A stretch of DNA of 64,000 bases from Thalia democratica (taxonomy: Eukaryota), in the NCBI GenBank assembly GCA_965202585.1, contig OZ241833.1:30814001-30878000 (forward strand). Direction: 5' to 3'. The notes under the pieces were generated by a model. The model did not search any database. It saw only the letters and a program-made list of their open reading frames with translations, and had not been told where the DNA came from. Of this stretch, positions 47,101-50,100 are shown one piece after another. Within the stretch, counting starts at the first letter, position 1, and each line of letters starts with the position of its first letter. A program made the translations under genes and the position numbers.

Positions 47101-50100
47101 CTGTTTCAAGATATTTTCGAGAACAAATGCTTAGTTTCTTGCTAAACAATACAAAACAAAAAGAAAAGTTACCTGCACTCGCGGACATCACAGTAGCTTG
47201 CACAACGATCCTCTGCTGTGCTGAGCTCTGCTTAATAGTTGCTTCGGCCTTGTACCACGTTTCGTACACGCTGATGGACTTGCTGATCAGTAGAGTGGAC
47301 TGGCTGGTCACAGTAGTGCCGTCTCCCACGAACACCTTCAACTCGCCGATGCTCTGAAAATGAATTGTCAATGTTTTGGTGGGAAGTTTGAACAGTTTGT
47401 TTGTTCAATTTGCTTTAGATATGTAATTTGATCTTTTTGATCTGAAATCGTACATTTTGTACAGTTTGTTTGCTATGTTTACATACACTTTTAATTTATG
47501 TGTTTAATGAATTTAAATACACTAAGTAGTTATTGTAAAAATTTCTTAAGTTATTAGCTTTAAAACAAATACAGGAAAAATACTTGTTATAAACAAATCA
47601 AGTTTGCAAACGGTGTTTTACATTCTTATATCAAAAGCCTAACAGTCATATAATAGAAACTAAGTTTTATACTTAATCCATACGTAATAAAATAGTAAAT
47701 AAGCTATAATTTTTTAATAAATCACTACCAACCGGTCCATACATGTGGTACCACATTTGAAAGCACCTGTCCCCTGAACTCGTAGAAATTAAATCGCTGT
47801 ACAGCTCCGCAGCGCTACCGACATTGTGCGCGGCCGTACTAATGTAAGCGTAGTAGCCGGATCCTGACATAAAAATAATTTTAAAATCATGTTGTTGAAG
47901 AAAAAAGTATGTTTCTATACTTATGTTGTAAAAAGAAAACAGTTTTATTTTTTCAAAAACAGGTTAAAGTTTTGAAATAATGATATACTTTTAGAAATTA
48001 AACATCAAGTAAAGTTTTAAAAATAACAGGCTAAACATTTGATAGTAAACATGTAGTTTAGTGAACTAACAAGTTATTGTACTAAAATGTAAATGTATTT
48101 TATGAAGTTAATAAAAAGAAAGTTTCAATAGTTTTAAATTCGTTTTTTTATCTAGACAGTTTAAGAACTATTAATACTGGTTTTAATTTTATAAAATTTT
48201 ATCTTCCCCTAACAACTCTACTTGGCCAAAATTCTTCAATACTAAATACGTTGCAATGCGACCTCTACCGGATAAATATTTCAGTAGATTTTAATTTCTC
48301 TGCCACCAAATCAAACAGTTAACAAACCCGTGTTGAGCGTGTGGTCGGTGGACGGGCCCGAGGTCCCGTACTGTCCGGTTTGGACGACCCAGTTAAACTG
48401 GTCCAACGTGCTCTGCGTCCACCCTGGGCACAACTGTCCTTTCTCGAAATCGCAGTCTATTGGTCCGGGAGCTGCAAGAAAAAAAAATGCGTTTAGTGAT
48501 AACTTGGTCAAAAATGAGAGTCTTTTTTTTAGTGTGAAACTTGTTGAATACTTTTTATTTACAGTTTTTATTAGAAAAAAAAATTATGGCATAAAATATT
48601 GATGGCTTAAACTTAAAACCAAACAGCAAAAACAAATATTTTTATTACTTTTCATATTTTAAACTTCTAAGTTTTTAGTAAAGTTTAATTTTTATCGAGT
48701 TTAAATGTTTCAGCTACACGTTTTTGAAAATGATGTTTAAATATGATTATCATTAATATTTTTAATGTTGTTCTCGAAAACCTTAATACACTTTTACGAC
48801 AAACTTTTTAACACCTATCTTAATTATTTCAAACAGTTTTAGCATTTAGTATGGCCTGCTTTGAAACAATTTAAATTACGATAAACAAATAAGTGAAGTT
48901 ATTTTTTTAAACAAAAGTTAATAATTATGAGAGCCGTCGCTGAATGTTTGATTAAAAATAACATGTGCAAGAAGAACAAATAAATTTTACTGTATTCATA
49001 AAACAAACAAAACGAATTACAAAAACCTTAAATTACGAGAACTAAAAAGTGTTAATTTATATAATTTTAATTTACATTTTAATTATTACTTTCATACTTT
49101 TAAAACAAGAGATAAAATGTTAACCATTTTGATTTTAATACAGTCAAGTGCATACTTTTTTAAATAATTTACAGTAAACGAAACTGTATTTGTACTTTGA
49201 ACTTATTTTAAACTAATCAAACACAATTTACTCTAAACAAAAAAATTATTGAATTCAATATACAAAAATATATTTTATCAATAGAAAACTGTTACGTCAG
49301 TTATATAGGTGATTAATTTTTATATAATACAATTAAATACTAGTTTAGATGTTAAAAAATGTATTTAACCTGAGTATGGTTCATTAAAAATGTTAACTTT
49401 AAATACTTTTTGAGAAGCTTTGCTAAGCTGTGTAAACTTTAATTATAGTTTAAAAAAATAAGATTTTATAAGTCTCATAAAGCTGTTTACTTATTTTAGA
49501 TCCAAAGTGTATTTTGTTAAACATAGCTTTATTTATAAAAAGTTGTATTAGTTACGTTAAAAATTTACGAACGTCATCTAACCTTGTATTTAATTCAAAA
49601 AAACATGTAACATTCTAGTTTAAACAAGAAAGTATTTAAAAACTTTTTGAGACTTTTTCATACTTTTAACTAAATAGTTAAAATCAAATCTTATAACTAA
49701 ACGCAATTTTTTTTATCAAAATAACTAATTTAAAAACTAGCAATATAATAGATTAAAAATTTATAAGTAGTTTGTTACAATAAAAATATATAAAACCGAA
49801 GCTATAGGAAATTAATAAAACTTCAAGTTAAATTTTTTTAATAACAAAACTAACAAACAAAGCACACTTTTATTAACATACTTTGAAAACTTTTATTTTT
49901 AATTAATTTTGTGCTTAATTGCAACTAAGTTTCAGATAATCGATATTAGTTTCAGTTAACATTTAAAAAAAAATTTATACTTTATCTAATAAACAAAACA
50001 AAACATTTACCTGCTAAAGACAGACTTTTAAATATAAAAATTGCAAATAAAATTGCATACTTTCTTATTATCATCGTGTCATTTAAAAACTGAACAAAAT

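What the first reader, a model, noticed from the sequence alone, without database searches (positions are those of the whole stretch)
50011..50074. Hidden signal-peptide exon in the only multi-kb intron: candidate internal promoter or second gene start
Seen: intron 48472-52255 (3.8 kb) is far longer than any other (next about 1.1 kb). It contains ATG ATA ATA AGA AAG TAT GCA ATT TTA TTT GCA ATT TTT ATA TTT AAA AGT CTG TCT TTA GCA G|GTAAAT, i.e. [21 protein letters not shown]. The phase-1 donor joins in frame to exon 48328-48471 ([11 protein letters not shown]), exactly at a triplet boundary (MAM9). Known: this fits the n/h/c signal-peptide layout with small residues at -3 and -1, and secreted modular proteins often have a separate phase-1 signal exon. 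Inference: the locus makes both a long form and an independently initiated form starting at MAM9, or it is two tandem genes linked by splicing. Caveat: AT-rich DNA easily yields F/I/L-rich peptides.
Basis: partly seen in the sequence, partly recalled or inferred. Interest (0 to 1): 0.8.

Follow-up and report, generated by a model that had tools for sequence, protein, structure and literature searches.

The report
Signal-peptide-like ORF in long intron
A 21-codon ORF that looks like a secretion signal does sit, in the right reading phase, inside the one oversized intron of a giant tunicate MAM-domain gene. Its codon make-up is pure intron and no RNA or cross-species data could be found, so it is about as likely to be a by-product of AT-rich DNA as a real second start.

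Summary
On the minus strand, 50074-50011 reads ATG...CAG|GTAAAT, giving [21 protein letters not shown]. Its phase-1 donor joins in frame to exon 48471-48328, which begins a MAM domain at a MAM-triplet boundary. The host intron (52255-48472, 3,784 nt) is a z~6 outlier against a median of 303 nt and a next-longest of about 1.1 kb.

**For a real exon**
- The donor scores at the median of real donors.
- Chance expectation in this intron is 0.003-0.02.
- Amphioxus and sea-urchin homologues start the same way: a phase-1 signal exon, a long first intron, then a MAM exon 6-7 residues before the first Cys.

**Against**
- GC is 0.22 and GC3 is 0.14, below all 117 homology-supported coding segments (GC3 minimum 0.30, median 0.70).
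- An out-of-frame uATG lies 8 nt upstream, and two further in-frame and two out-of-frame ATGs lie within 130 nt.
- The upstream AG acceptor is weak.
- No relative above about 36% identity exists in 1.84 billion proteins, so conservation is untestable.

**Verdict**
- One giant gene, with the ORF not a maintained coding exon: 0.55.
- Functional minor alternative start: 0.33.
- Two separate genes: 0.06.

Similar "hidden internal signal exon" readings were noted elsewhere in this genome (s1-301183, s1-287113) and are unverified.

The parts
50011..50074 (-). Candidate exon: ATG plus 20 codons plus 1 nt, encoding [21 protein letters not shown]. The n-region is MIIRK, the hydrophobic core is [10 protein letters not shown] and the c-region is KSLSLA, with S at -3 and A at -1.
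   Evidence: GC is 0.22 and GC3 is 0.14; the synonymous-codon log-likelihood is -22 bits against the gene's own usage.
50005..50010 (-). Donor GTAAAT after CAG, phase 1.
   Evidence: PWM score 8.4 bits, the 53rd percentile of 104 confident donors. Only 0.8% of 2,268 intronic GT decoys score as high.
50075..50091 (-). AG acceptor (50091-50090) plus a 15-nt leader before the ATG. It is a possible spliced-leader (SL) trans-splice or cis acceptor. The leader contains an out-of-frame uATG at 50082-50080, whose 3-codon uORF stops on ATGA overlapping the main ATG.
   Evidence: Acceptor PWM is at the 12th percentile of real acceptors, and 11.5% of decoy AGs score as well. A cis-splice from 52256 into this acceptor reads L F K stop (read by eye).
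48472..52255 (-). The 3,784-nt phase-1 intron or spacer. GC is uniformly 16-27%.
   Evidence: Length outlier at z = 5.95. No repeats, TE-like ORFs, MAM relics, GC islands, tRNA or Rfam hits.
52256..52415 (-). Upstream exon: the end of the preceding MAM plus a Pro/Thr linker, ending GAC|GTAAGT in phase 1.
   Evidence: Donor PWM is at the 51st percentile.
52228..52235 (-). Read-through stop TGA (52235-52233) overlapping AATAAA (52233-52228). If the donor were not used, the protein would end ...SGRKFCFVI.
   Evidence: AATAAA occurs 15 times in the intron against 13.5 expected, so it is uninformative.
48328..48471 (-). Exon that begins the MAM domain ([10 protein letters not shown]...). It is the common acceptor for both phase-1 donors.
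   Evidence: Pfam MAM E = 4.5e-07, profile positions 1-38. Acceptor PWM is at the 49th percentile.

Best explanation
The window holds one very long minus-strand gene of the MALRD1-like 'MAM and LDL-receptor class A' kind. It has about 35-39 MAM domains in the window, arranged largely in triplets, and runs off both ends.

The 3.8-kb stretch is an unusually long phase-1 linker intron. It sits at an ordinary position for this gene, and the main product is made by splicing 52256 to 48471.

The ATG..GTAAAT ORF is not a coding exon maintained by selection like the rest of the gene. AT-rich DNA readily encodes F/I/L/K-rich peptides, and this one happens to carry a good donor in the compatible phase. 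If it is ever used, it would be as low-level or evolutionarily young noise. That use could come from a cryptic start, or from a spliced leader (SL) added at the weak AG 15 nt upstream.

Shown: the anatomy, phases, site scores, composition and chance rates. Inferred: non-use.
For: - **Composition.** The candidate has GC 0.22 and GC3 0.14. All four Phe codons are TTT (the gene uses TTT for 19% of Phe), Tyr is TAT (8%) and two Leu are TTA (4%). The synonymous log-likelihood is -22 bits, whereas real exons have a median of +15 and a minimum of -1.1 per 20 codons.
- **Non-circular check.** 117 MAM-homologous segments, found without regard to composition, have GC of at least 0.35 and GC3 of at least 0.30 (median 0.70).
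- **Upstream region not purged of ATGs.** There are five within 130 nt, one of them 8 nt from the start. No TATAWA lies within 250 nt.
- **Weak upstream acceptor**.
- **Ordinary intron position.** The same phase-1 linker intron occurs at 61354/60719.
- **The upstream exon is meant to be spliced.** It ends in a perfect GTAAGT exactly where coding composition stops.
- **The gene does not end here.** No TM or NPxY tail occurs in the 6,682-aa chain, while full-length homologues of about 6,040 aa end in one.
- **Chance is not negligible.** Lenient look-alikes are expected at 0.25 per window.
Against: - A candidate of this quality is expected only 0.003-0.02 times in this intron.
- It lies in the single z~6 outlier intron, which this explanation leaves unexplained.
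- The donor is of median strength.
- The -3 position is A.
- Homologues start with the same exon geometry.
- A low-abundance isoform would escape codon-usage selection, so composition cannot exclude a functional minor start.
Confidence: 0.55

Rival explanations
1. This is a functional but minor alternative 5' exon. Transcripts begin in the intron, from an internal promoter near 50.1-50.3 kb or by spliced-leader (SL) trans-splicing of the long pre-mRNA at the AG at 50091-50090. They splice 50011 to 48471 and encode a shorter secreted form with its own signal peptide. That form starts at the MAM triplet beginning at 48471 and shares the rest of the gene.
For: - The layout is signal-peptide-like: positive n-region, a 9-10-residue hydrophobic core, and S/A at -3/-1.
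- The phase-1 donor is of median strength.
- Chance expectation in this intron is 0.003-0.02.
- The host intron is a z~6 length outlier with no TE, repeat or RNA gene to explain it.
- Amphioxus and Diadema homologues have a separate 17-codon+1 phase-1 signal exon, a long first intron and a second exon starting 6-7 residues before the first Cys. The candidate has 21 codons+1, a 1.5-kb intron and 6 residues.
- Earlier notes say this is a tunicate genome with apparent SL trans-splicing, so no promoter would be needed.
Against: Composition and codon choice are purely intronic. There is a uATG 8 nt upstream and in-frame ATGs at 50158 and 50203. The acceptor is weak. No conservation or RNA evidence is obtainable. 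The filters were post hoc.
Confidence: 0.33
2. There are two tandem genes. The upstream gene ends by not using the 52256 donor, giving ...SGRKFCFVI, stop at 52235-52233 and AATAAA at 52233-52228. The downstream gene starts at the candidate exon as its only start. This could be a Ciona-style operon, with the downstream cistron SL trans-spliced at 50090.
For: - A stop and an AATAAA lie directly after the donor.
- A 2.2-kb spacer plus a 1.5-kb first intron would look like a compact-genome gene boundary.
- A single gene would exceed 6,682 aa in this window alone and continues beyond both ends. The longest homologues seen are about 6,050 aa.
- Ciona operon biology is described in PMC1488885.
Against: - A sole start exon of a gene with GC3 of 0.70 should share its codon bias, and it does not.
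- The eight read-through codons are also intron-like, and the donor is a perfect GTAAGT.
- The AATAAA count in the intron is at expectation.
- The upstream part would lack the TM/NPxY tail of full-length homologues.
- Ciona operons lack intercistronic DNA, whereas here there would be 2.1 kb.
- The amphioxus 'tandem genes' are an annotation split in the middle of a MAM domain.
Confidence: 0.06
3. The CAG|GTAAAT junction is a recursive-splicing (ratchet) site. It would be one of several that let a spliceosome tuned to introns under about 1.1 kb remove a 3.8-kb intron in steps. The ORF would then be incidental.
For: Four AG|GT composites in this intron (51208, 50748, 50010, 49369) pass the 10th percentile of both real acceptor and real donor scores. 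The other 32.8 kb of intron holds three. Markov expectation is 0.84, giving P(>=4) = 0.013. The sites would cut the intron into pieces of 460-1,047 nt.
Against: The count was post hoc. All four sites fall in the lowest third of real splice-site scores, and one has a purine-rich tract. From my own knowledge, recursive splicing is documented for much longer introns in flies and vertebrates and not in tunicates.
Confidence: 0.05

Closest known systems
MALRD1-like 'MAM and LDL-receptor class A domain-containing protein 1/2-like' giants of invertebrate deuterostomes and molluscs (e.g. XP_070566390.1 Ptychodera flava, XP_066300034.1 Branchiostoma lanceolatum, CAI9725294.1 Octopus vulgaris, XP_002734431.2 Saccoglossus)
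   Same: Long arrays of MAM domains interspersed with LDLa modules. Best hits reach E = 1e-62 to 1e-85 over 13-28 MAM stretches. Sizes go up to about 6,050 aa.
   Different: Only 29-36% identity in the best alignments to these homologues, so no orthologue is identifiable. The window's array is longer (6,682 aa without reaching either end) and carries nested foreign modules, as noted by earlier readers.
Separate phase-1 signal-peptide first exon of family members (B. lanceolatum gene in L003; Diadema antillarum gene in L004)
   Same: A short first exon (17 codons + 1 nt), a GT donor in phase 1, a long first intron (10.4 kb and 2.9 kb), and a second exon beginning 6-7 residues before the first Cys of MAM1. 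The candidate has 21 codons + 1 nt, a 1.5-kb intron and 6 residues.
   Different: Those exons open the annotated gene and are Leu-rich. The candidate lies inside an intron of a continuing array, is Phe/Ile-rich and has intron composition.
Internal alternative first exons that supply a new signal peptide to a short isoform of a large extracellular protein (e.g. MADD-4B/punctin and agrin N-terminal variants; from my own knowledge, not tested here)
   Same: The proposed logic is the same: an internal start plus its own signal peptide gives an N-terminally shortened secreted isoform.
   Different: Those cases have transcript and genetic evidence. Here there is none.
SL trans-splicing and operons of Ciona (Satou et al. 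2006, PMC1488885)
   Same: This is a tunicate genome according to earlier notes, and an AG acceptor lies 15 nt upstream of the ATG.
   Different: Ciona operons have no intercistronic DNA, and the AG itself is the upstream gene's poly(A) site. Here the acceptor is weak and lies 2.1 kb from the upstream coding end.

Membership tests
MAM domain array (Pfam PF00629), host gene | Exons match the MAM profile above the curated cut-off. | tested here: met
   Exon 48469-48329 scores 30.3 bits against a 26.4 cut-off. Two other exons score 44.6 and 30.5 bits. A home-built MAM HMM gives 39 domain hits on the spliced chain.
MALRD1-like (MAM + LDLa) proteins | LDL-receptor class A modules lie between MAM domains. 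| tested here: inconclusive
   Exon 14821-14621 hits Ldl_recept_a at 20.7 bits, below the 24.1 cut-off. Cys/acidic LDLa-like motifs are visible in linkers. The best database relatives carry that name.
MALRD1-like (MAM + LDLa) proteins | A C-terminal TM segment and an NPxY cytoplasmic tail, as in full-length homologues. | tested here: not met
   There is no 19-residue window with mean hydropathy above 1.8 and no NPxY in the 6,682-aa chain. The gene runs off the window, so the tail may lie beyond it.
Secretory signal peptide | A positive n-region, a 7-15-residue uncharged hydrophobic core, and small residues at -3 and -1. | tested here: met
   MIIRK / (Y)AILFAIFIF (mean hydropathy 3.26) / KSLSLA, with S at -3 and A at -1. 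This is a rule-based check only.
Secretory signal peptide | Prediction by a trained classifier (SignalP) or demonstrated cleavage. | not testable with these tools
   No such predictor or experiment is available.
Genuine coding first exon of this gene | Codon usage and GC3 like the gene's other coding sequence. | tested here: not met
   GC3 is 0.14, against a minimum of 0.30 and a median of 0.70 in 117 homology-supported segments. The synonymous log-likelihood is -22 bits.
Genuine coding first exon of this gene | A functional donor in a phase compatible with the next exon. | tested here: met
   The donor is at the 53rd percentile of real donors. It is phase 1, as is the 48471 acceptor.
Genuine coding first exon of this gene | A leader free of upstream ATGs, plus promoter or TSS evidence. 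| tested here: not met
   There is a uATG 8 nt upstream and four more ATGs within 130 nt. No TATAWA lies within 250 nt. TSS data are unavailable.
Genuine coding first exon of this gene | Conservation in related species, or transcript support. | tested here: inconclusive
   An exhaustive HMMER search of 1.84 billion proteins found no relative above about 36% identity over the array and none of the same species. An exact search for exon 23 in JGI metagenome contigs gave 0 hits.

The most novel reading that the evidence does not exclude
A giant tunicate MAM-array gene has acquired, out of its own AT-rich intron, a new signal-peptide exon. That exon lets the cell make a second, shorter secreted protein from the middle of the locus. 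No promoter may be needed, because a spliced leader could be added at the intronic AG 15 nt upstream of the ATG. This would be de novo birth of an N-terminus, with SL trans-splicing serving as an internal 'start' mechanism.
Probability: 0.3. Interest if true: 0.45.

Novelty: not a real feature. Interest (0 to 1): 0.25.

Why it matters
If real, it would change the gene model, either to two nested products or to a boundary inside a >6,600-aa array. It would also be a tidy example of an AT-rich intron giving rise to a signal peptide, possibly exposed by SL trans-splicing. If it is not real, the case is a calibration point. In a genome whose exons have GC3 of about 0.7 and whose introns are about 22% GC, signal-peptide-like ORFs with plausible donors arise by chance at roughly 0.03-0.25 per 44 kb of intron. 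Codon composition is then a cheap and strong filter for 'hidden exon' calls.

Tried and rejected
- **Same-species or close-relative proteins.** I ran an exhaustive phmmer search of exon 23 against 1.84 billion representatives. Against the chain, the top 30 hits are at most about 39% identical in any local alignment and 29-36% in their best-scoring ones.

Full report
**What is there**

The window is an AT-rich eukaryotic sequence (about 35% GC). It is filled by one minus-strand series of GC-rich exons separated by introns of about 22-25% GC. A simple splice-aware dynamic-programming chain gives 122 exons and 6,682 codons, reaching both window ends. A MAM HMM built from database homologues finds 39 domain hits on this chain. 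Many are arranged as back-to-back triplets separated by Pro/Thr linkers or LDLa-like modules. Pfam confirms MAM on individual exons, and LDLa weakly.

The nearest proteins are [quoted passage not shown] giants from hemichordates, amphioxus, echinoderms and molluscs. Their best alignments to the chain are only 29-36% identical. Earlier notes of this scan call the genome a tunicate with apparent spliced-leader (SL) trans-splicing. They also say the MAM array continues beyond both ends of the window.

**The observation**

- The ORF at 50074-50011 encodes [21 protein letters not shown] plus one G and is followed by GTAAAT.
- With the CT that opens exon 48471-48328, the G makes Ala, followed by [10 protein letters not shown], which is the start of a MAM domain (Pfam profile positions 1-38).
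- The upstream exon (52415-52256) is the end of the previous MAM plus a Pro/Thr linker. It ends GAC|GTAAGT, also in phase 1.
- The intron between them is 3,784 nt. The median is 303 nt and the other maxima are about 1.05-1.1 kb. That is z = 5.95 on a lognormal fit of the other 120 introns.
- The position is a triplet boundary.

**Is it more than chance?**

I scored splice sites with matrices built from 104 confident exons.
- The candidate donor (8.4 bits) sits at the median of real donors. Only 0.8% of intronic GT decoys equal it.
- A rule-based signal-peptide filter finds this ORF and nothing else in 43.8 kb of sense-strand intron. On the antisense strand of the same introns, an earlier any-phase, any-donor filter gave two weaker ORFs with poor donors, and the later phase-1 filter gave none.
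- Second-order Markov simulations of intron sequence give these expectations per 43.8 kb:
  - lenient filter (phase 1, donor at or above the 10th percentile): 0.25;
  - donor at least as good as the candidate: 0.03;
  - strictest rule set: 0.005.
- For this intron alone the expectations are 0.021 (lenient) and 0.0027 (donor at least as good).

The filters were written after seeing the candidate, so the true chance rate is somewhat higher. The ORF is unlikely to be pure coincidence in this particular intron. Across hundreds of windows, though, a few such coincidences are expected.

**Support from family gene structure**

Two homologues with clean N-termini were examined: B. lanceolatum XP_066300034.1 and Diadema antillarum XP_071492659.1. 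I fetched both loci and walked the first exons. Both have:
- a separate signal exon of 17 codons + 1 nt (phase 1);
- a long first intron (10.4 kb and 2.9 kb);
- a second exon starting 6-7 residues before the first Cys of MAM1.

The candidate has 21 codons + 1 nt, a 1.5-kb intron and 6 residues, which is the same design. Part of this agreement follows automatically from the phase-1 acceptor at 48471. The same kind of phase-1 linker intron occurs internally at 61354/60719.

**Evidence against a maintained coding exon**

The gene's coding sequence is strongly codon-biased. TTC is 81% of Phe, TAC is 92% of Tyr and TTA is 4% of Leu, and median GC3 is 0.72.

The candidate uses TTT four times, TAT once and TTA twice. 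Its GC is 0.22 and its GC3 is 0.14. Given the peptide, its codon choices are 22 bits more likely under intron triplet frequencies than under the gene's usage. Real exons score a median of +15 and never fall below -1.1 per 20 codons.

My exon chain was built using composition, so I repeated the test on 117 segments found purely by MAM homology in all three minus-strand frames. Their minimum GC is 0.35 and minimum GC3 is 0.30, with a median GC3 of 0.70. The candidate lies below all of them.

The bias also holds in weakly constrained Pro/Thr linkers, as read, so it is not a by-product of protein constraint.

Other points:
- The presumed leader is not purged of ATGs. An out-of-frame ATG lies 8 nt upstream, with a 3-codon uORF overlapping the start. 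Four more lie within 130 nt, two of them in frame.
- There is no TATAWA within 250 nt.
- The AG 15 nt upstream of the ATG, the obvious SL or cis acceptor, is only at the 12th percentile of real acceptors.

**One gene or two?**

If the 52256 donor were unused, the upstream protein would end SGRKFCFVI, with a TGA overlapping AATAAA. Several observations weigh against that:
- AATAAA occurs at chance frequency in this intron, 15 against 13.5 expected.
- The eight extra codons are intron-like.
- The donor is a perfect GTAAGT placed exactly where coding composition ends.
- No GC-rich terminal exon exists in the spacer.
- Full-length homologues end in a cytoplasmic NPxY tail. No TM segment or NPxY is present anywhere in the window's chain.
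- A sole start exon for a heavily biased downstream gene should share the bias.
- The apparent amphioxus precedent for tandem genes is an annotation split in the middle of a MAM domain.
- Ciona-type operons have no intercistronic DNA (PMC1488885), unlike the 2.1 kb here.

I therefore rate two separate genes as unlikely (0.06).

**What explains the long intron?**

I do not know. I found no repeats, TE-like ORFs, MAM relics, tRNA or Rfam matches, or GC islands.

One weak, post hoc lead is that four AG|GT composite sites pass lenient thresholds in this intron, one of them the candidate's own junction. Expectation is 0.84, giving P = 0.013. The sites would cut the intron into pieces no longer than this gene's normal introns. 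The sites are weak, and I give recursive splicing 0.05.

**Conservation and transcripts**

Neither could be tested.
- An exhaustive HMMER search of 1.84 billion representatives with exon 23 returned no same-species protein and no close relative.
- The one 59%-identical fragment is a genomic exon of an unrelated animal.
- An exact search for exon 23 in JGI metagenome contigs found nothing.

**Verdict**

| Reading | Weight |
|---|---|
| One giant gene; the ORF is not a maintained coding exon (coincidence or noise-level use) | 0.55 |
| Functional but low-abundance alternative start, by internal promoter or SL addition, giving a shorter secreted form | 0.33 |
| Two separate genes | 0.06 |
| Recursive-splice site | 0.05 |

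A single RNA-seq junction count or an SL-primed RT-PCR would settle it.

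Noticed in passing
window 49369, 50010, 50748, 51208 (minus strand): Four AG|GT composite sites pass the 10th percentile of both real acceptor and donor scores in the 3.8-kb intron. The other 32.8 kb of intron holds three. Markov expectation is 0.84, P(>=4) = 0.013, post hoc. 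They would split the intron into pieces of 460-1,047 nt, so recursive splicing is a weak lead.
   Followed up: partly
window 52560-52648: A 17/34-nt tandem repeat (about 2-4 copies) lies inside the neighbouring 1,112-nt intron (53527-52416). My automatic exon chain wrongly placed two weak exons there (53185-53080 and 52634-52575).
   Followed up: partly
whole window, minus strand: There is an extreme exon/intron composition contrast. Homology-supported coding segments have median GC 0.54 and GC3 0.70, against about 0.22-0.25 GC in introns. C-ending codons are strongly preferred (TAC 92%, TTC 81%), yet ATA makes up 36% of Ile codons. This suggests strong translational or exon-definition selection on this gene.
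   Followed up: partly
whole window, minus strand (chain residues 257-3414 especially): MAM domains are organised as back-to-back triplets separated by Pro/Thr linkers. Some linkers carry a phase-1 intron 6 residues before the first Cys (61354/60719 and 52256/48471), while others have no intron (exons 57409-57103 and 44751-44411). All domains are old, at 15-44% mutual identity.
   Followed up: yes
L003:49178-49590 (Branchiostoma lanceolatum CM068858.1): The RefSeq-type model XP_066300034.1 ends in the middle of a MAM domain. The next model starts 412 bp downstream, also mid-domain (MYGTGMGTL...). This is probably one gene split by annotation.
   Followed up: partly
window ~11056-11700 (minus strand): My exon chain has one in-frame stop here (chain residue 5394), inside a 360-residue non-MAM stretch between MAM hits. 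The exon model in this region is unreliable and was not curated.
   Followed up: no
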